Assembly (NCBI RefSeq): GCF_000315625.1 | Contig: NW_005434648.1 | Coordinates: forward strand, 186,001-250,000 | DNA from: Guillardia theta CCMP2712 | Lineage: Eukaryota; Protista; Cryptophyta | Length of the DNA stretch: 64,000 nucleotides | Direction: 5' to 3' | In this document: piece after piece, positions 3,505 through 58,971 of the stretch | Numbering within the stretch: the stretch's first letter is position 1 | How the letters are laid out: every line of letters starts with the position of its first letter | Program-made: the position numbers and the translations under genes | The notes under the pieces: model-generated | Told to the model about the DNA's origin: nothing | What the model saw: only the letters and a program-made list of their open reading frames with translations | Database searches by the model: none

Positions 3505-4641
3505 GCCCCCGCCTCATATCTCATCTGTCCTCGTCATTCCATGGCTGTGCTCTGATTGGTTGGTAGTGAGATTCTCGAAAAACAGAGGCAGAAGCAGGTG
3601 ACGCCGCCTCCTCCATCTGCCCTCCCTCAACTCCCTTCGCTCCACTCGCCCTCTTCCTTCGCTCTGCTCTGCTCTGCTCTGCTCTCTGATGTTTTCTTTC
3701 CTTCAGTTTCTCGTCGGCATTCGCGCCATCCTCGCCTTCCTCGTTCTCTTTCAGAACGGAGACAACAACCTTAACAACAAGATCGAAGTCCTCAGGAAAC
3801 TTCGAACGCTCCCCCCCGATCAAGTTCCGCAGGTTGTTGGCGTTCCACTTCCCTTTCGTCCTCTCCGCTCATTTCCATTTCTCTCTCCTTCCCTCCCCTC
3901 CCCCTTCCCATTTCAGCTGGTCTTCTCCGTCCCTGTCCCATTCTCTTGCCTGTGCTCTCGTTTGAACCTGCTTCGTTTGTCGCTCGCGCTCGCGCTCGCT
4001 CTCGCTCTTCCTCTGACAGCATACGCAGAGACGGGCGGTGGAGGAGGAGTACCAGGAGCTGCAGAAGCTCCCGCAGGTGATGAGCGAGGCAGAGCTAGGA
4101 ACGGAGTGACGAGGAGGCGGCAGGAGGAGATCGGTCTGCTTCAGTACTCCTTCAATGAGGTAAACACTCGATCCTTCCGTCTTGCTCCTTCCCTCCCCCG
4201 CCGCTCTCCCGGCCTCCTCTTCCTCTTCCTCTTCCTCCTCCCCCTTCCTCTTCCACCTCTCTGGTCTTCCCCTCCCCCCCCCACCTCCTTTTTCGTATAT
4301 TCCACTCTCCTCGGCTCTCNNNNNNNNNNNNNNNNNNNNNNNNNNNNNNNNNNNNNNNNNNNNNNNNNNNNNNNNNNNNNNNNNNNNNNNNNNNNNNNNN
4401 NNNNNNNNNNNNNNNNNNNNNNNNNNNNNNNNNNNNNNNNNNNNNNNNNNNNNNNNNNNNNNNNNNNNNNNNNNNNNNNNNNNNNNNNNNNNNNNNNNNN
4501 NNNNNNNNNNNNNNNNNNNNNNNNNNNNTTAGATGACATCGAGGCCAACCTGGACAAGAAGGGGCTACATCTTGTTCTCTCTAACTTGGGAGTCAACCTC
4601 GACGACGAGCAGGTGATGATTTGTTGTGACGACCTCCACCT

Positions 4642-10267: not shown

Positions 10268-12902
10268 TGAGCCAACGCTAGTCTGCTCCGCGGGCTGGAT
10301 CCTCCCCCCCCCCCTTTCTTTTCAAACTCTTGNNNNNNNNNNNNNNNNNNNNNNNNNNNNNNNNNNNNNNNNNNNNNNNNNNNNNNNNNNNNNNNNNNNN
10401 NNNNNNNNNNNNNNNNNNNNNNNNNNNNNNNNNNNNNNNNNNNNNNNNNNNNNNNNNNNNNNNNNNNNNNNNNNNNNNNNNNNNNNNNNNNNNNNNNNNN
10501 NNNNNNNNNNNNNNNNNNNNNNNNNNNNNNNNNNNNNNNNNNNNNNNNNNNNNNNNNNNNNNNNNNNNNNNNNNNNNNNNNNNNNNNNNNNNNNNNNNNN
10601 NNNNNNNNNNNNNNNNNNNNNNNNNNNNNNNNNNNNNNNNNNNNNNNNNNNNNNNNNNNNNNNNNNNNNNNNNNNNNNNNNNNNNNNNNNNNNNNNNNNN
10701 NNNNNNNNNNNNNNNNNNNNNNNNNNNNNNNNNNNNNNNNNNNNNNNNNNNNNNNNNNNNNNNNNNNNNNNNNNNNNNNNNNNNNNNNNNNNNNNNNNNN
10801 NNNNNNNNNNNNNNNNNNNNNNNNNNNNNNNNNNNNNNNNNNNNNNNNNNNNNNNNNNNNNNNNNNNNNNNNNNNNNNNNNNNNNNNNNNNNNNNNNNNN
10901 NNNNNNNNNNNNNNNNNNNNNNNNNNNNNNNNNNNNNNNNNNNNNNNNNNNNNNNNNNNNNNNNNNNNNNNNNNNNNNNNNNNNNNNNNNNNNNNNNNNN
11001 NNNNNNNNNNNNNNNNNNNNNNNNNNNNNNNNNNNNNNNNNNNNNNNNNNNNNNNNNNNNNNNNNNNNNNNNNNNNNNNNNNNNNNNNNNNNNNNNNNNN
11101 NNNNNNNNNNNNNNNNNNNNNNNNNNNNNNNNNNNNNNNNNNNNNNNNNNNNNNNNNNNNNNNNNNNNNNNNNNNNNNNNNNNNNNNNNNNNNNNNNNNN
11201 NNNNNNNNNNNGTCACGGTCACAAGGGGTTGCAGGGCCAGTTTGGGTGATGGGACTGAATATTCGTTATATAATTTCAAAATATAATTGCTCATATGAAA
11301 AACGTCTCAGTAAATTTCAAGCATGCATCTCGAGCCCCATAGATTGTTTACTACAGGACGTGATGACTCGGACTGAAGGGTGGGGTGGAAGAAAATTATG
11401 CAGTGACTAAAGCATAGAGTAGGGGTAGGGTAGTGATGCGCAGGAAAACGAAGCTGTGGGTGGTACAAAGCATAGAAAATGGCGTTCAATAATTGGGAAT
11501 AACAGGGGGTACTGGTAGGGAGACAAGACCATTTCAACAGGGTGGGTAGTGTAAACTGGGGGGTGGGGAAGGCACATCTACATCTGTCAATCGGAGGAAC
11601 AAGACAACGTTTCGACACTTTCTCTTCATAGTACTTTTTTTAGTCGCAGTAGCACTCAACAACCCAACCAATACTACCAGTAGGAGTACCCCTATCCCTC
11701 CTCCGATGTTCCCAAAATTGATTAAAGTTTTATGGTACCAAAGCAATGGTGACCTTACTACTATCTTTACAACAGAAACACACGTGTAGTAATCTTTTTT
11801 TTTTTTGAGGGGGGAAATGGCTTTGCCTGTGGGTGGGATTCCACGTCTTTCGTCTGGTGCCAGGGGTATAGTTTTTGCGGCTTCAATTGAACCCCCCTTG
11901 GGGACAGAAGGATGACCCCCTGTGACTCCCAAAGTTTTGAAATACTGCGATACAGGAGGGTGTAGGGTAACACCGGTACACCCCCCAACCCATCTCTAAT
12001 TTCCAATCAAATACCTGTGCCTCTCGTACCAAATAGTGTGAGGTGCCCTATAGATTTTTTCATAAAAATTGGTACAATATTTGAGTTATCTTGATAAAAT
12101 GTACCATGTTTCAAAACAAGAGGTATAGGCTTGTGATTATTTGATACAAATAAAAAAACATTTCGAAACTGGTGGTAATACGAAGAATAGAATATGATGG
12201 TACACTTTTGAAAACAAACAAATAGTTTTATTTTTGTGTACTGATTTTAAGACTCCAGTACCGGGTCGTTACGAAGTCTGTACAAATCTTAAAACGACTT
12301 TTGTTGTCCCGCGCTGCAGTAAAAATGGCGAAGGAGGAAGGGAGGAGAGGGAAGAATATGTTGAGGGAGAGTAATGTTGGGAGGACGGAGGGAGGAGGGA
12401 GAGTTTAGAATCAGGATATAATGATGCTGGTATCTACACGCCCTTTCGCGTGGCTGCATGCTAAGAATGTATGGCGTTTGTGCCTTTCAGTTCGAGGAAG
12501 ACTCTTGCTCCCGTACAATGGCGGGTTGCTTGGCATAGACCATCGATGCGTTTTGCAAGTTGAGGGTAAAAATGATCTAGCAGGAAGCAGACACCTGATG
12601 TCTTAAAGCGCTTTGATCGGTGTGCTGCTGGGCGAGAGTCATTCCTTGTGCAGTACTTTTTGTTCGTGACGTGACTAGACCTGCCGTCGCAATGTTGCCT
12701 GTTGTTGACGATTTCATGCTGTGCAGAGCAAGCTGCTGCAATGTTCGTGCCAATGATTCCCAGGTAATGACAACTGCATGACTAAAACTAGAAAACTGAA
12801 CTTCAGGACAGCGAGGTGTGATCGCCCAACACCGGAACTGCTGTTATCTTCGGAAGGACTACTTATCATTATTCAGCTCTCTGAAACTTGCCGAGAGGGC
12901 AT

Positions 12903-31702: not shown

Positions 31703-32194
31703 AGCTACAGAACGGCTTCAATTCCACTGAATCATCCCATGAGTAGCTTGATTTGTCTTCTGGTCCGTGGAGACCTTTGATCTATCATCTGTTTAAACAA
31801 TCCATCTTAGTATCAGAAAGAAAGAAACATCTCAACTGGGGACATCTTTTCTGCACCTAGGAGATTTTTATCGATCACTTCAAATCAATCGCGTCTTATT
31901 TTTCAATAGGATGCGAAAGCATACCAAAAGTTGTGTATCTTTTTCAATGCCTTCATCTTCCTTCTTCACTGCCTTCAATACTCCTTTCCTCTCCTCCCCA
32001 TTCTCCTCTCCACCCCATTCCCTTCCACTCAGAACAATCTTGTCGTGCTTTCCGCCATGTTTCAACGGTAAGTCCGCGAATGATGGGAGACCGTGCCGGC
32101 GCCGGGAAATTTTACGGCAGGCCGAGGGCTATCAAAAGATTTCCGTTATATTTCCCTCTCGTTTTGTAACGGAAGGATCGCTGCTCCGGGGGCC

Positions 32195-34265
32195 ATGCAG
32201 GCAGCGCCGACAGTGATGGCGGCGATGCTGGTGCAAGTGGCAGGGGCGACGGCAACATGGCGAGCTCATCCCTTCTCTCCTCACTCAGTGTACATGAAAG
32301 ACCCTTCTCTGCTCCCTCTCCCTACCTCCTCTCCGTTCCACTCGTTGTCTTGGCGCTCGTCGGACCTGCGGCTCAGGGGTGGCGGGGTGCCGAGCTTATC
32401 CTCGCAAGCCTCACGATTCGCAAAGTTCTACAGTGAAGACGGTCTGACTGATCTGCCGATGAATGCTTCCTTTGCCATGGGCTCCGGGAGCGGCGACGAA
32501 TACCAGGAGCAGGACTCTGCTTGTGAGGGAGAGCTGAACGCGTGGGAAGTTGGAAAGCTGCAACTGGAAGCATGCCAGGACATCATGGATGACTGTTACG
32601 ACCGGTGGATAAGACCATGTGTAGAAGAACTCGAGAACAGAATCTTTGAAGGAGAGGAGGAGGCAGCGCGGAAGGGAGAGTTCCGCCCCTACAACTTCTT
32701 TGCCAAGGAAGCCACCTCGATCATTCAGAAGTGCAAGATCGTGATAGACAAGGCGGTGAAGGACCTGCAGACGCGGCTCGAGGTCATTCAGTTCAGTGCG
32801 GTGAGGGGAGGGCAACCAGTCAGCAGCATCGAGTTTGAAGACTTCAACGTGGACCTCAAGCACGTCCGCCACCTGACCGTCGAGTCCCATCGGTACCCTG
32901 AGCCTCTCGCTTCCCTTGGAGGACGAGATGCTAACCTTGCGATCCAGAGAGCTGCATGCCACCACCGACAGGAACATGGACAGGCTGTGGCAGCAGGTGA
33001 GATGAGCTCTCGCTGCTCACAGCCCACCTGGCGCTGACGGCTGGTTGGGCAGCAAAAGGCAGTGATCAAGGACTACTACGTGGAGATGTTTGAGCGAGGG
33101 ATCGAGTGAGAGCAGATCGGATTCTCAGGGATGGGAGGACTGAGACTCTTTGCCAGGAATCTCATCGCTGGTTCACGGCAGTTCAACAAGACCTCGTCCA
33201 AGCTGGCGAAGAAGGTAAGGATGGGAGGAGCCTGTGGGGTGTGACCGGTTTCCGTCGCAGATCTACAAGCAGTGCGAGCACGAGCTGAAGTTGTCTGTGC
33301 CCAAGAACGGGAAACCGAGTTTCTGGAACTACACGCAGGACCTTGACGACATGAAAGAAGTGAGGCATTGCGACTCCTGCGCCTCTCCTGCCCCGCGGCC
33401 TTCGACTGACCTGCCACAGGCGATGATGGCGTTGATTCAAGCCAGACGGCGAGAAGCAGGACTGGACGATCTTGTTAGCTACTTCAGTGAGCTGGTAGAG
33501 CTGGTGAGAAGGATGGGGTTGGGAAAGTGACTCGCGGCAGGACGATGGTCAGCGAATGTTCTCAAGAAAATGGTGGAAGAATCTATTGATCCGAGGAGTG
33601 ATCACCTATTTCCAGATGTAAGACACGTTCTCCTTCTCCCTCTCTCCTCCTCCTTCTATCAATCCAGTTGTCTCTTGCCTCTCTCCATCCCCTCGGCTGA
33701 TGGCCTCCGCGTGCTATAGCTGTCAGTCGGCCTGGGCGTACAGGAAGGCGAGGAGGATCATGCTCCCGCCGAGGTTCTCCAAGGTGACAAGACAGAGAGG
33801 AGGGAGAAGAGATGGAGGGAATGGTCTCATGGTTGCTGCAGGCATGGATGGCTGCCGTGTTCCTGCCTTGGACCTTCTCGCCCGTCACCCTGGGAGACGT
33901 TCGGCCTCTCGTCCCAGAAGTTGTGGAGACAGCAGCAGCGGAGAGGAGGGAGAACACAGGAGGTGATGGGGAAGGACAGGACGAGACCCACGAAGCTGCA
34001 GCGCAAGCACAGCATGAGAAGCCAGAGGATGGAAAGGAACGAGCGACTGAGGTCAGGGAGAAGGAGAAGCAGGTGGAGGAGAAGGCGGCGGCTGGTGAGG
34101 GCAAGGAGCACAAGGATGCGGATCATGGAGGCTCGACGGAGCAAGAAATCGAGTGAGACGACTGTGGCAAGTTGGGTGTACGAGCTGACCGTGTGCTGGC
34201 GCAGGCAAGAATTCAAGGATGGGCTGTCGAGTCAGAGTAAGCTTGAGGAAATCTTCAAAGAATAA
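32195..34265 (+). CDS. Uncharacterised helical protein with N-terminal signal-like leader ending in LRLRGG
   Basis: Long first exon plus several short GT-AG introns (ELHATTDRNMDRLWQQ, QKAVIKDYYVEMF, FWNYTQDLDDMKE, AWMAAVFLPWTF); no family recognised. Confidence 0.65.
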
Positions 34266-46449: not shown

Positions 46450-49416
46450 ATGCAGGGAGCCGGTGCTGCGTCGCGGTCAGCGATCGTGCTGTCGGCGCTT
46501 CTCATGTCATCCTTGTTGCTCCTTTCTAGTGCTAGCACTCAGCAGTGCTCCTCTCCTCTCCACCTGCGCGGCGGAGGAGTCATGGCGCCCCTGCAGTCCA
46601 TCGCCAAGAGGGTTGGAGGTTTTCTTCGAACCGCTTCCTTCGGGAATCTTGACTCTTCAAACCTGGTAGCTCCAGAGGGCAAGGTCGATCTCTCCTACTC
46701 CGATGTGCAGCGTTTGAGGGGCGGGGTGCAGGTGTATCCTCTTGTTTCCCTTGCATGCTCCTTGCTGCTGCTGCTTTCTCCTTGTTGTCTTTGAGGGATA
46801 CTTGAAATTCTCCACCAAGGATGTTCGTTACACCGCGGTGACTTGAATGTTCTTTTCTTGCAGATCATCTTCGATGATATTAGGAAGCTCATGGAGGAGG
46901 AGAAGCTCTCTGAATCCGCCATCAGGGTACAGCTTCATCGCACCCAACAGGCAAGGATCCTGACGTTAGCACAGGCCTTCCAGCAAGCCTACGAAGCCTT
47001 GGTCCGTGGAGACGACGGCATGATCTCAGAGCGAATGATCTCTCCTGCTCTTGACTTGCCTATGCTTGCCGATATCAAGCAGGTTTTCTCCCTCCGCCAA
47101 GTTGATGATGGTGCTGACGAGACTGTCAGGCCTCGATTCCCGACGACAAAGTCAAGGCTGTAAGAGAGCTTGACGCCTGATGGGCGACGGGCTGACATCT
47201 GGTTCCCAGCTTCTTGGACAGACTGTCATCTTGAAGCTCAACGGTGGTCTGGGAACGGGAATGGGTCTGGAGAAGGTGAGAGGGTTGCATGGCGGGCGGG
47301 GACAGTGTCTGAAAGCGAGGCACAGGCCAAGTCCCTCCTTGAAGTCAAGGGGTCCGAGACCTTCTTGGACTTCATTGCCAAGCAGGTGAGCTTGACAGTC
47401 TGACGAGGATCCTGCTGGTTTGAGAGACTGCAGGTGTTGCACTTCAGGAAGACCAAAGGAGACGTCCGCTCGATGTTCATGAACTCCTTCTCTACCAGGT
47501 CCTCCCGTGACGCCGATGGGAGAGGACTGGGAGCTGACAGCCTTGCTCGCAGCGCCGACACCAAGGATGCTCTCAAGGGACATCCAGAGTTGGTTCAGGG
47601 AGGATGGTGCGCCACGCGAGCTGCTCGCTCTCTGTCCTTGGGATCGCGCGCTTAAATGATGCAAACAGGGAGGTCGTCCAGAACAAGGTCCCCAAGATCG
47701 ATGCCGAGAGCCTGCGCCCAGCCAAGTGGCCAGGTAGAAGGCATGGAGGAGAGGATTGCAGCGAGACTGATGACTGGGCTCAGCAAACCCCACCAAGGAG
47801 TGGTGCCCTCCCGGTCACGGTGATCTCTACCCTTCCCTTGCTGGATCAGGGATGCTCGATTCCCTCCTCAAGGTGAGCGGGGAGGCAGGACAGCAATCCG
47901 AGGTGTTGTGAAGAGGAGAGGCAGGATGGGGTGAAGTACATGTTCGTCTCCAACTCGGACAACTTGGGAGGTACGACTTGTCATGGTTAGCCAGCTGGAA
48001 TATGACGGGAGTGAGCGCAGCCACCCTCGACCTCGAGCTCTTGAACTTCTTCGCTCAGTCCGACAAGTCCTTCTTGATGGAGGTGCTGCTGTGCGAGGGA
48101 GGATGGGCTGTGTCTGAACTTCCACGTTTCAGGTGTGCGAGCGCACGGAAGCTGACAAGAAGGGAGGACACCTTGCCGTGAGGTTTGACGCCTTCGTCCG
48201 ACCTCAGTCCCTCTCCTCACTGCCTCCCTCCCACCTGCAGGAAGCAGGACGGCCGCCTCCTCCTTCGTGAGTCGGCTCAGTGCCCACCAGACGACGAGAA
48301 GGCCTTCCAGGATGTGTCCAAGCACAAGTACTTCAACACCAACAACTTGTGGATCCGCCTGGACAAGCTGAAGGAGGTTCTGAGAGCATACACTTGGTTG
48401 CTGGACTGAGCTGCTGGGAAGGTGTTGGACAAGAACAATGGAGTTGTTCCCCTGCCCATGATCAAGAACGCCAAGACCGTGGATCCCAGCGACTCCAAGT
48501 CAGCTGCTGTCTTCCAGGTTTGAGGAGACGAACCCCTCCCCTTCCCCTTCGCTCTCTCTGACTTCATTCCAGCTGGAAACTGCCATGGGCGCAGCTATCG
48601 AGAGCTTCGACAACTCTGGAGCCATCGTGGTCGACCGATCTCGTTTCGCCCCTGTCAAGACCTGTGCTGATCTCCTGAGGGTGCGGCTGGAGGAGGACGG
48701 CCCCGCTCCTCTCTCATGCTCTTGCTCCATGGCAGGTCCGCTCCGACGCCTACGATGTGACTGAGGACAGCCGCCTAGTGCTCTCGGCCGAGTGCAAGGG
48801 ACAGGTAGGAGACTCCAGCTGGAGGGAGAGCCCAGCTCCTGACCCAGCTGTCAGCCGCCTGTCGTCGATCTCGACAAGAAGGAGTATAAGACGATGAGCG
48901 GGCTCGACAAGATGCTCAGCAAGGTGAAAGGAGCTCCTCCACCACAGCCAGACCTGGCTGCTTCTGACACTCCATGGCAGGGAGACGTCCCCTCCCTGAA
49001 GCACTGCAAGAAGCTCACTGTCAAGGGCAAGGTCTGCCTTCCCCACCTAGAGTGGAGCTGGAGCTGAGCTGGACCCCAGGTTGCGCTCGAGAAGGGCATC
49101 ACCTTCAAGGGCGAAGTCACCATTGTCAACCCGACCGCCGAGTGGCGTATCCTCAAGGTGGGAATCAGCTGGGGTTTGACGCAGCCCTCCGCTCACAGTC
49201 TTTAATGCGCAGGCCGGAGTTTATGAGAACCAGACCGTCGAGCTGGTAGCGTCGCCTCCTCTTCCATCCTCACTGCTCCCTCCCATCTCCTCCATGCTCT
49301 TTCATCCCCCTCCCCCCCTCTTGAAATCCCTGTTTTCTTTCCTGCTACTTTCTCCTTGTCCCGACTCCGATGTTGACGAGCTTGACTGGCAGGGCGAGAA
49401 CAGTGAGAAGTTGTAA
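46450..49416 (+). CDS. UGP: UTP--glucose-1-phosphate uridylyltransferase (UDP-glucose pyrophosphorylase) with bipartite leader, probably periplastid-targeted; last exon approximate
   Basis: [87 protein letters not shown]; many introns of about 50 nt. Confidence 0.95.

Positions 49417-54126: not shown

Positions 54127-58971
<4,845 letters not shown>

What the first reader, a model, noticed from the sequence alone, without database searches (positions are those of the whole stretch)
46450..46735. Two ubiquitin-C-terminus-like (L/R)LRGG motifs in the UGPase leader, the second directly before the catalytic domain
Seen: the leader reads signal peptide..SPLHLRGG (46558-46575)..DVQRLRGG (46708-46725), and the conserved UGPase N-terminus ([17 protein letters not shown]) starts within a few residues of the second GG. 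No Phe follows the likely signal cleavage site. Established: ubiquitin ends in LRLRGG and deubiquitinases cut after the di-Gly; complex red plastids import proteins through the ubiquitin-dependent SELMA machinery; non-Phe leaders go to the periplastid compartment, where cryptophytes make starch. Inference: LRGG may be a processing site for a DUB-like peptidase that matures periplastid proteins, a candidate undescribed presequence-processing system.
Basis: partly seen in the sequence, partly recalled or inferred. Interest (0 to 1): 0.8.

Follow-up and report, generated by a model that had tools for sequence, protein, structure and literature searches.

The report
Periplastid UGPase leader with LRGG boxes
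The alga Guillardia theta sends its UDP-glucose pyrophosphorylase, which supplies the sugar donor for starch, into the relict cytoplasm around its plastid behind a leader with two copies of ubiquitin's tail (LRGG); the first is a genome-wide, conserved mark of such leaders and the second is switched in or out by alternative splicing, which points to an apparently undescribed "cut here" signal.

Summary
The window is Guillardia theta CCMP2712 nuclear DNA. The gene at 46450-49416 is its only canonical UDP-glucose pyrophosphorylase. Its leader has a signal peptide, no Phe after it, LHLRGG at residues 37-42, and RLRGG directly before the conserved enzyme.

Transcripts show a 51-nt intron inside it and an alternative donor. 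The public gene model starts at Met87 and has no leader at all.

Box 1 is kept in six related UGPases ([LM][RH]LRGG in five, LRHRGG in one), while the rest of the leader drifts. Box 2 is looser (L[RK]GG, once TKGG). In G. theta and two relatives it lies in a cassette that some transcripts splice out.

Genome-wide, 21-27 of 40 sampled LRLRGG sites lie 29-70 residues after a signal peptide. Background is 3-5% (P about 1e-17). None has Phe at +1. One is the published periplastid EF-1alpha, where the box abuts the native GKEK start. Phe-type plastid leaders lack the box.

The best reading is a periplastid leader whose LRGG boxes are processing sites. Cleavage and a deubiquitinase are inferred, not shown.

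This scan has found the same leader class before, on other DNA of this genome. The double box and its splice switch were not among the notes I retrieved. I found no publication describing the motif.

The parts
46450..49416 (+). UDP-glucose pyrophosphorylase gene (public model GUITHDRAFT_93945), 23 coding exons in isoform A, introns mostly 45-62 nt
   Evidence: Exon model with GT-AG borders. Pfam UDPGP hits on single exons. The product is identical to database proteins P0206, P0289 and P0288, named Guillardia theta. The last exon, 49393-49416, encodes GENSEKL and the stop.
46450..46536 (+). Signal peptide coding part (about residues 1-29, [29 protein letters not shown]). The next residues are TQQC, with no Phe.
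   Evidence: Hydrophobic core and small residues at -3/-1, read from the sequence and a simple hydropathy rule. No dedicated signal-peptide predictor was available.
46558..46575 (+). LRGG box 1: LHLRGG (residues 37-42), the canonical end of the periplastid leader
   Evidence: L39-R40-G41-G42 is invariant in the five aligned orthologues and present in the 15 orthologue or cluster-member sequences whose N-terminus reaches the box. A sixth lineage has LRHRGG. AF2 predicts the region as disordered.
46619..46669 (+). 51-nt in-frame intron inside the leader, removed in isoform A and retained in isoform B ([17 protein letters not shown])
   Evidence: P0206 against P0289, both reproduced exactly from window DNA with these borders (GT...AG).
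46576..46710 (+). N-terminal extension between the boxes. It has a moderately conserved segment (Gt [14 protein letters not shown]; relatives [IV]D[IL]GK[VI]AQxIxGVF) followed by a variable linker.
   Evidence: Alignment A1, sequences, low-confidence helix 48-54 in AF2.
46684..46731 (+). Alternatively spliced 48-nt cassette ([16 protein letters not shown]). An alternative donor GT at 46684 skips it in isoform B.
   Evidence: P0289 joins ...APEGK directly to IIFDD. Two relatives show the same kind of switch with a 10-residue cassette TL[RH]LKGGGEV.
46711..46725 (+). LRGG box 2: RLRGG (residues 71-75 of isoform A), at the N-terminal edge of the folded enzyme
   Evidence: Sequence. Relatives have GLRGGG, GLKGGG, RLKGGE, RLKGGG/HLKGGG, RLKGG or RTKGGG at the same place. 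Homologues without a signal peptide or LRGG box (P0003, P0099) begin about here. pLDDT rises from 55 to 96 across residues 61-90.
46732..46863 (+). Phase-0 intron (132 nt) separating the leader exons from the first conserved enzyme exon
46864..46926 (+). First conserved UGPase exon ([21 protein letters not shown]). The public gene model starts at the Met inside it (MEEEKLS).
32195..32389 (+). Leader of a second, unrelated gene in the window: hydrophobic N-terminus, linker, then LRLRGG (LRGG at 32372-32383). It belongs to the same leader class.
   Evidence: No Pfam family and no reliable Atlas match for the mature part.

Best explanation
Exons 1a and 1b of the G. theta UGPase gene encode a bipartite periplastid targeting leader. 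It works in four steps.

1. A signal peptide takes the protein into the ER that surrounds the plastid. This is established for this class of leader.
2. A short Phe-less linker marks the protein for the periplastid compartment rather than the stroma. This is the established rule for cryptophytes.
3. The linker ends in LHLRGG, a copy of ubiquitin's tail. That ending is the conserved terminal element of a large class of G. theta periplastid leaders. I take it to be the site where the leader is cut off after transfer across the periplastid membrane, most likely after Gly-Gly by a ubiquitin-tail-specific (DUB-type) peptidase of the periplastid ubiquitin system. This step is inferred.
4. The released enzyme keeps a 33-residue extension that ends in a second, weaker box (RLRGG) abutting the catalytic fold. 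Alternative splicing includes or skips that box, so one isoform can be trimmed down to the bare enzyme and the other cannot. This step is inferred.

The enzyme then makes UDP-glucose for periplastidial starch synthesis.

The confidence of 0.5 is for the whole chain. By part: about 0.85 that this is a periplastid leader with a functional, conserved LRGG box; about 0.5-0.6 that the box is a cleavage site; about 0.35 that the enzyme is a DUB.
For: Identity of the gene: Pfam UDPGP hits on its exons. The product is identical to the G. theta proteins P0206, P0289 and P0288. It is the only canonical UGPase locus in the genome. Cryptophyte starch is made in the periplast from UDP-Glc (preprint 10.64898/2026.09.25.754361).

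Conservation: box 1 is invariant in five orthologue clusters and is LRHRGG in a sixth, while its flanks vary. Box 2 is L[RK]GG in most.

Splice switch: isoform pairs that are otherwise 100% identical differ only by the box-2 cassette, in G. theta and in two relatives.

Genome-wide class:
- The LRLRGG DNA pattern gives 353 hits against 255 for the reversed control. About 73 of the 100 listed hits use true Leu/Arg codons, against 32% expected.
- Of the first 40 true-codon sites, 21 pass a signal-peptide heuristic and 6 more look like leaders by eye. Background is 2.6-4.9%, P about 2e-17. The median distance from Met is 46 residues.
- For LRGGGV sites the figure is 6 of 60, against 2.6% background.

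Link to the periplastid compartment: the leader of GFP-localised EF-1alpha gt_84077 is my locus L080, which reads ...[12 protein letters not shown]. RRM1 gt_85468 carries SSPLRLRGG (ASAFind 2.0 supplement, PMC12136025). The FBPase paralogue with an ASAF leader lacks the box, and the non-Phe paralogue has LRLRGG.

Junction position: the box abuts the native N-terminus in EF-1alpha, in a DnaJ protein (LRLRGGGV|DNRRYYDILGL), and at UGPase box 2.

Open niche in the literature: the TPL peptidase is unidentified (PMC5756292), and ptDUP is absent from cryptophytes (PMC12412216).

A DUB with the same kind of leader exists: a USP14/Ubp6-like gene with a signal peptide plus LLSLRGG.
Against: No mature N-terminus was seen.

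Known DUBs normally need the ubiquitin fold as well as the tail. The leader has no such fold (no Pfam hit; disordered in AF2).

Box 1 in one orthologue is HRGG and box 2 is often LKGG or even TKGG, so the requirement may be only [RK]GG.

If box 1 is the cut site, the purpose of box 2 is unclear. Its skipping could be splicing noise at a GKV-encoded AG|GT.

The signal peptide and its cleavage site were judged by eye and a simple rule, not by a trained predictor. The orthologues are unnamed transcriptome or metatranscriptome proteins. No USP or UCH gene other than the USP14-like one showed such a leader in the flanks examined.
Confidence: 0.5

Rival explanations
1. The LRGG boxes are sorting or recognition elements that are not cut. 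For example, the SELMA receptor/derlin complex, the Cdc48-Ufd1-Npl4 motor or a retention factor may read them.
For: Conservation and enrichment show function but not cleavage. The import machinery is ubiquitin-dependent and its transit-peptide receptor is unknown (PMC5756292). A ubiquitin-tail mimic could plausibly engage ubiquitin-binding parts.
Against: A pure recognition signal need not sit exactly at the junction with the native N-terminus, as it does in EF-1alpha ([10 protein letters not shown]), DnaJ and UGPase box 2. Ubiquitin receptors bind the Ile44 patch of the fold, not the tail (established knowledge). The distance from the signal peptide varies from 29 to 70 residues.
Confidence: 0.2
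2. The boxes are cleavage sites, but for a dedicated non-DUB processing peptidase (the postulated TPL peptidase). The likeness to ubiquitin's tail is convergent.
For: A TPL peptidase is postulated but unidentified. Box variants HRGG, LKGG and TKGG suggest a looser [RK]GG rule than the ubiquitin tail. DUBs usually need the ubiquitin fold, which is absent here.
Against: The commonest form is the full six-residue ubiquitin tail LRLRGG, an estimated 135-175 leaders genome-wide. The compartment has its own ubiquitin system but lacks the diatom-type ptDUP. A USP14-like DUB carries the same leader.
Confidence: 0.2
3. Only box 1 matters. Box 2 is a decaying relic of an older leader end, and its alternative splicing is noise from a cryptic donor created by the Gly-Lys-Val codons.
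For: Box 2 varies (LRGG, LKGG, TKGG). In-frame intron retention and alternative donors are common noise. The assembled isoforms do not give abundances.
Against: An [RK]GG box is still present at the same place in all six lineages, next to a fast-changing linker. The same in-or-out switch is seen in three taxa, and the GKV that provides the donor is itself conserved.
Confidence: 0.3
4. Chance or compositional artefact: two LRGG in a Gly/Arg/Leu-rich leader with no function.
For: Bulk DNA-pattern counts for LRGG and LRGGGV are not above the reversed control. The motif was picked post hoc.
Against: Conservation in orthologous leaders. 21-27 of 40 LRLRGG sites lie behind signal peptides, P about 2e-17. 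True-codon excess.
Confidence: 0.01

Closest known systems
Bipartite topogenic signals of periplastid (PPC) proteins in cryptophytes and diatoms: signal peptide plus transit-peptide-like region lacking the +1 aromatic residue (Gould et al. 2006; ASAFind 2.0, PMC12136025)
   Same: Signal peptide, short Phe-less spacer, nucleus-encoded protein with a function expected in the periplastid compartment. Two published GFP-localised G. theta PPC leaders carry the same box.
   Different: Published descriptions define the class only by the missing Phe and by charge. A conserved LRGG / LRLRGG terminal box is not mentioned in any paper I could search. The only near miss is a passing remark on an 'LRGGG motif' in diatom and red-algal Omp85 (PMC2222254).
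C-terminal processing of ubiquitin and ubiquitin-like precursors by deubiquitinases (cut after ...LRLRGG)
   Same: The same six residues immediately upstream of the presumed cut, with a downstream protein released. The compartment has its own ubiquitin system.
   Different: No ubiquitin fold precedes the tail (no Pfam hit; disordered in AF2). Here the 'tail' ends a targeting peptide. Cleavage is not shown.
PEXEL/TEXEL export elements of apicomplexans (signal peptide, spacer, short RxLxE/Q/D motif cut by plasmepsin V / ASP5)
   Same: Same architecture: signal peptide, variable spacer of a few dozen residues, and a short conserved motif acting as a processing-and-sorting mark on many unrelated proteins.
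   Different: Different motif, protease class, compartment and lineage. This is an analogy only.
LXGG sites of coronavirus papain-like proteases, and double-glycine leaders of bacteriocins (C39 peptidases)
   Same: Linear peptides cut after Gly-Gly with Leu at P4 (PLpro) without a ubiquitin fold. This shows that a DUB-fold enzyme can use the tail alone.
   Different: Viral or bacterial systems. No homologous enzyme was sought or found here.
Eukaryotic UDP-glucose pyrophosphorylase (UGP-A type, Pfam PF01704)
   Same: Full catalytic fold with [12 protein letters not shown] and the other invariant residues. 45-58% identity to algal, plant-lineage and bacterial UGPases.
   Different: A 75-residue targeting leader and N-terminal extension, absent from homologues without a signal peptide. 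The public model of this gene omits it.

Membership tests
UDP-glucose pyrophosphorylase (PF01704, UGP-A type) | Match to the UDPGP profile above the curated cut-off | tested here: met
   Exon translations score 34-46 bits against a cut-off of 22. The genome search shows the same exons. The full-length database protein P0206 carries PF01704.
UDP-glucose pyrophosphorylase (PF01704, UGP-A type) | Nucleotide-binding loop [11 protein letters not shown] and the other invariant catalytic-core residues | tested here: met
   L152-L164 and about 90 further columns are invariant across 35 UGPases including this one. Confident Rossmann-like model, mean pLDDT 85.5 and above 90 over the core.
UDP-glucose pyrophosphorylase (PF01704, UGP-A type) | Enzyme activity with UTP and glucose-1-phosphate | not testable with these tools
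   Needs an assay.
Periplastid-type bipartite targeting signal (cryptophyte) | N-terminal signal peptide | tested here: inconclusive
   Clear hydrophobic core and an A-S/S-A-S cleavage context by eye and by a hydropathy rule. No trained predictor was available.
Periplastid-type bipartite targeting signal (cryptophyte) | No Phe or other aromatic residue at +1 of the transit-peptide-like part | tested here: met
   TQQC follows the predicted site. Orthologues have M, and L148 has A, at +1.
Periplastid-type bipartite targeting signal (cryptophyte) | Experimentally shown periplastid location | not tested
   Not done for UGPase. Leaders of the same class (EF-1alpha, RRM1) were GFP-localised by others.
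LRGG-ended periplastid leader class (defined within this scan) | Signal peptide, variable linker, then (LR)LRGG 29-70 residues from Met | tested here: met
   Box 1 starts 36 residues from Met. The class distribution comes from 21 sampled leaders.
LRGG-ended periplastid leader class (defined within this scan) | Box kept in orthologues while the linker diverges | tested here: met
LRGG-ended periplastid leader class (defined within this scan) | Proteolytic cut at the box | not testable with these tools
   Needs N-terminal proteomics or mutagenesis.
Ubiquitin / ubiquitin-like protein | Beta-grasp fold preceding the LRGG tail | tested here: not met
   No Pfam family on the 94-residue exon-1 translation. 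Residues 1-63 have pLDDT below 50 with no beta structure. Only about 8-10 residues separate the signal peptide from box 1.

The most novel reading that the evidence does not exclude
LRGG boxes are the cut sites of a periplastid ubiquitin-tail-specific protease that is the long-postulated TPL peptidase of cryptophytes, taking over the deubiquitinating role that ptDUP is proposed to play in diatoms. In UGPase, alternative splicing of a second box decides whether a 33-residue N-terminal extension is removed. That would give two enzyme forms and a splice-controlled handle on periplastidial starch synthesis.
Probability: 0.2. Interest if true: 0.85.

Novelty: new variant of a known kind. Interest (0 to 1): 0.75.

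Why it matters
How proteins that stay in the periplastid compartment lose their targeting peptide is an open question. The 'TPL peptidase' is only postulated (PMC5756292). Cryptophytes lack the ptDUP deubiquitinase that diatoms are thought to use (PMC12412216).

A short, conserved motif at the end of a large class of leaders, with an estimated 135-175 exact LRLRGG cases, gives three things:
- A sequence rule that should sharpen prediction of the periplastid and nucleomorph proteome.
- A defined site for GG-to-AA mutagenesis and N-terminomics.
- A substrate for fishing out the protease.

For this locus specifically, the work shows that the only canonical UGPase of G. theta is aimed at the compartment where starch is made from UDP-glucose. 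The public gene model hides this because it lacks the leader. The locus also offers a natural experiment, with isoforms that have or lack the second box.

Tried and rejected
No read-level support for splice sites or isoform ratios was obtained. Splice evidence rests on database transcripts.

2. Bulk DNA-pattern counts for LRGG (12,115 against 14,038 for the control) and LRGGGV (121 against 147) show no genome-wide excess. Non-coding G-rich DNA swamps the signal. Only site-by-site context analysis and the longer LRLRGG pattern were informative.

3. The representative-protein search with exon 14 returned mostly fragments and no cryptophyte cluster. Local tblastn ranking was muddied by intron read-through. 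The G. theta protein was reached only through a word search with hit P0145.

4. The spliced model was never sent to a search tool as a joined sequence. Exons were searched by reference, and later searches used the database protein P0206.

5. Looking for the protease:
- The two UCH (C12) genes have no leader.
- Five USP genes with long ORFs showed none in 2 kb upstream.
- Of 20 further USP upstream regions, only C13 showed one.
- OTU, Josephin, JAMM and ULP families were not examined.

6. The LHC loci gave only three readable Phe-type leaders, so I used the published cryptophyte plastid set instead.

7. The mature part of gene 2 (32390-32890) has no Pfam family and no reliable Atlas match.

8. 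Gould et al. 2006 (MBE) and Curtis et al. 2012 (Nature) are not held. I could not check whether their figures or supplements mention the motif.

9. I considered that the inter-box segment might be a second transit peptide for the stroma. I rejected this because no aromatic residue would be exposed after either the signal-peptide site or box 1.
Full report
**What is there**

The window is G000:C26:186001-250000 of an 87.1-Mb, 669-contig assembly. Its UGPase product is identical to proteins that their sources name Guillardia theta CCMP2712: EKX47327.1 / GUITHDRAFT_93945, and MMETSP transcripts.

The gene runs from 46450 to 49416 on the + strand. Its exons are very short and its introns are 45-62 nt with GT-AG borders. 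Single exons hit Pfam UDPGP.

A Pfam search of the whole genome finds no second canonical UGPase. It finds only three distant UDPGP-family loci, on C20, C17 and C28.

The joined model was translated once in a script to check the frame and was never sent to a search tool. Once the word search returned the database protein P0206, I used that id.

**Check of the observation**

LRGG is encoded at 46564-46575 ([10 protein letters not shown]) and at 46714-46725 ([10 protein letters not shown]), both in the frame that opens at ATG 46450. The N-terminus has a hydrophobic core, followed by SSAS|TQQC with no Phe. The conserved enzyme starts in the next exon ([23 protein letters not shown]).

- Transcript isoform A (P0206, 550 aa) removes an in-frame 51-nt intron (46619-46669). 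The leader up to the second GG is then 75 residues.
- Isoform B (P0289, 551 aa) retains that stretch but uses a donor at 46684. It joins ...APEGK to IIFDD and so skips [16 protein letters not shown], which contains the second box.

Both N-termini are reproduced letter for letter from the window with these borders. The public gene model (P0288, 464 aa) begins at Met87 inside the first enzyme exon and has no leader.

**Is it more than chance?**

In the window's six-frame translation, LRGG occurs 12 times against 3-7 for each of eleven permuted tetrapeptides. The only copies in real coding frames are the two in the UGPase leader and one in the leader of an unrelated gene at 32195.

The stronger test is conservation. 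Five orthologue clusters, 69-71% identical to the G. theta protein overall and 39-50% over the first 130 residues, all have a signal peptide followed by [LM][HR]LRGG. L39, R40, G41 and G42 are the only invariant leader columns before the second box. A sixth lineage, recovered from its contig (L148), reads PPLRHRGG.

At the second position the relatives read GLRGGG, RTKGGG, GLKGGG, RLKGGE, RLKGGG/HLKGGG and RLKGG. In every case this is 2-5 residues before F.[ED]IR.LME. So box 1 is strictly kept, and box 2 is kept as [LT][RK]GG.

These relatives carry no organism names. Their being cryptophytes is an inference from similarity.

**The splice switch**

In two relatives, pairs of otherwise 100% identical proteins differ only by a 10-residue cassette, TL[RH]LKGGGEV, which is box 2 (P0271/P0282 and P0284/P0287). 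G. theta's isoform B skips its own box 2 in the same way.

In all three taxa the upstream donor falls after a conserved Gly-Lys, in Gly-Lys-Val. I could not measure isoform abundance, so regulated switching and splicing noise both remain possible.

**The wider class, tested here**

The DNA pattern for LRLRGG occurs 353 times in the genome, against 255 for the reversed control. By my count, about 73 of the 100 listed hits use true Leu and Arg codons, where 32% is expected.

I fetched the first 40 true-codon sites in genome order, without regard to context.
- 21 lie 29-70 residues (median 46) downstream of an in-frame Met followed by an uncharged hydrophobic stretch, with no stop between.
- Six more look like leaders by eye.
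- The same rule accepts 2.6-4.9% of background positions. Binomial P is about 2e-17.

Scaled up, that is roughly 135-175 exact LRLRGG leaders, before counting xLRGG variants. A parallel census of LRGGGV sites gave 6 of 60, plus the two in this window, against 2.6% background.

None of the 21 leaders has Phe at the likely +1 position.

Three results place the box exactly at the junction with the mature protein.
- Locus L080 reads ...[40 protein letters not shown]. The box stands where EF-1alpha's initiator Met would be.
- A DnaJ protein reads LRLRGGGV-DNRRYYDILGL.
- UGPase box 2 overlaps the position of Met1 of homologues without a signal peptide or LRGG box, such as P0003 and P0099.

**Link to the periplastid compartment**

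The ASAFind 2.0 supplement (PMC12136025) lists G. theta proteins localised by GFP fusion in Phaeodactylum.
- gt_84077, EF-1alpha, has a 25-residue window that is the L080 leader.
- gt_85468, RRM1, has a window that contains SSPLRLRGG.

The same paper's cryptophyte plastid set has about 90 mostly xSAF-type leaders. LRGG occurs three times in that file, and two of those are the same protein, the non-Phe FBPase paralogue XP_005839318 (…PQALRLRGGSAATHVR). The ASAF-type paralogue XP_005821930 lacks the box. Three LHC leaders read from the genome (ASAF/AVSF type) also lack it.

Cryptophyte starch is made in the periplast from UDP-Glc (preprint 10.64898/2026.09.25.754361). A periplastid UGPase therefore makes metabolic sense.

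**Structure**

An AF2 model built on 35 sequences is confident for the enzyme (mean pLDDT 85.5). Residues 1-63 are below 50. Confidence rises through 61-90, and box 2 sits at the N-terminal edge of the first helix. No ubiquitin-like fold precedes either box.

**Mechanism**

Shown here:
- A Phe-less leader starting with a signal-peptide-like stretch on the only canonical UGPase.
- A conserved box 1 that is the hallmark of a large leader class.
- Periplastid localisation of class members, from the literature.
- Junction placement of the box.
- A semi-conserved box 2 under alternative splicing.

Inferred: the boxes are cut after Gly-Gly. The cutting enzyme is a ubiquitin-tail-specific peptidase of the periplastid ubiquitin system.

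The inference has some support.
- The commonest form is the full six-residue ubiquitin tail.
- The TPL peptidase is unidentified (PMC5756292).
- Cryptophytes lack ptDUP (PMC12412216).
- G. theta encodes a USP14/Ubp6-like protein at G000:C13. It has a signal peptide plus LLSLRGG, a UBL domain that matches USP14's (1wgg_A, E 1.9e-5), and a USP Cys box GLENLGNTCYM downstream.

There is also evidence against it.
- DUBs normally need the ubiquitin fold.
- Variants such as HRGG, LKGG and TKGG suggest a looser rule.
- USP14 is a proteasome-bound chain trimmer, not an obvious leader peptidase.
- No N-terminus was observed.

**Comparison and novelty**

The leader belongs to the known kind 'periplastid bipartite signal'. 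The conserved LRGG terminal box is not mentioned in any paper I could search. The nearest is a passing remark on an 'LRGGG motif' in diatom and red-algal Omp85.

This scan has already noted the same leader class on other DNA of this genome. Thirty-five notes mention it, and several follow-up reports call it undescribed. Those are AI notes and I did not use them as evidence. I re-derived enrichment, conservation and the link to published periplastid proteins independently.

This locus adds the following:
- The tandem arrangement of two boxes.
- The contrast between a strict first box and a loose second one.
- The conserved splice switch over the second box.
- The corrected gene model, which shows that G. 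theta's only canonical UGPase carries a periplastid leader.

**Limits**

No trained signal-peptide predictor was available. No RNA reads were available. The orthologues are unnamed. The census is a sample, not the whole proteome. The count of true codons among listed hits was done by eye.

Noticed in passing
window 32195-34265 (+): A second gene of unknown function carries the same kind of leader: MQAAPTVMAAMLVQVAGATA..., then SSDLRLRGGGVPS with LRGG at 32372-32383. A possible short upstream ORF and a roughly 49-nt 5'-UTR intron lie at 32058-32120. The mature part has no Pfam family and no reliable Atlas match.
   Followed up: partly
window 46864-46926; protein P0288 (EKX47327.1, GUITHDRAFT_93945): The public G. 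theta gene model for this UGPase starts at Met87 ([11 protein letters not shown]) and omits the whole leader. Annotation-based targeting predictions would therefore call the enzyme cytosolic.
   Followed up: yes
G000:C13:4753-8300 (+) (L162, L169): A USP14/Ubp6-like deubiquitinase gene has a signal peptide, the linker ...RRTSLLSLRGG, a UBL domain matching USP14's UBL (1wgg_A, E 1.9e-5), a long insert, and a USP Cys box (GLENLGNTCYM). It is a candidate periplastid DUB, possibly the partner of the periplastid proteasome.
   Followed up: partly
G000:C3:1065084-1066005 (L080): The periplastid EF-1alpha leader ends ...[16 protein letters not shown], so the box replaces the initiator Met of the native protein. 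The published 25-residue window (gt_84077) stops just short of the box.
   Followed up: yes
G000:C139:97082-98000 (L059): A DnaJ-type protein carries two box-like elements eight residues apart (ASMRGGGGVREVVLRLRGGGV-DNRRYYDILGL). This is another possible double-box leader.
   Followed up: no
ASAFind 2.0 supplement (PMC12136025, files 18, 19): Diatom hints exist. Thalassiosira TrxH (Thaps3a_19991), the best BLAST hit to a Phaeodactylum protein in the ASAFind periplastid reference set, reads ...IDGVLSLRGGVVHE between leader and thioredoxin domain. sDTC (Thaps3a_8632) has LQLRLGG. PMC2222254 mentions an LRGGG motif in diatom and red-algal Omp85. The box may not be confined to cryptophytes.
   Followed up: no
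G000 (whole genome): Only one canonical UGPase locus was found, and it carries a periplastid leader. The host cytosol may rely on the distant UDPGP-family genes (C20, C17, C28) or on a leaderless product from an internal start. This was not examined.
   Followed up: no
window 4320-4528, 10333-11211, 55682-55781: Runs of N (assembly gaps). They explain the apparent GC dip at 10-12 kb.
   Followed up: yes
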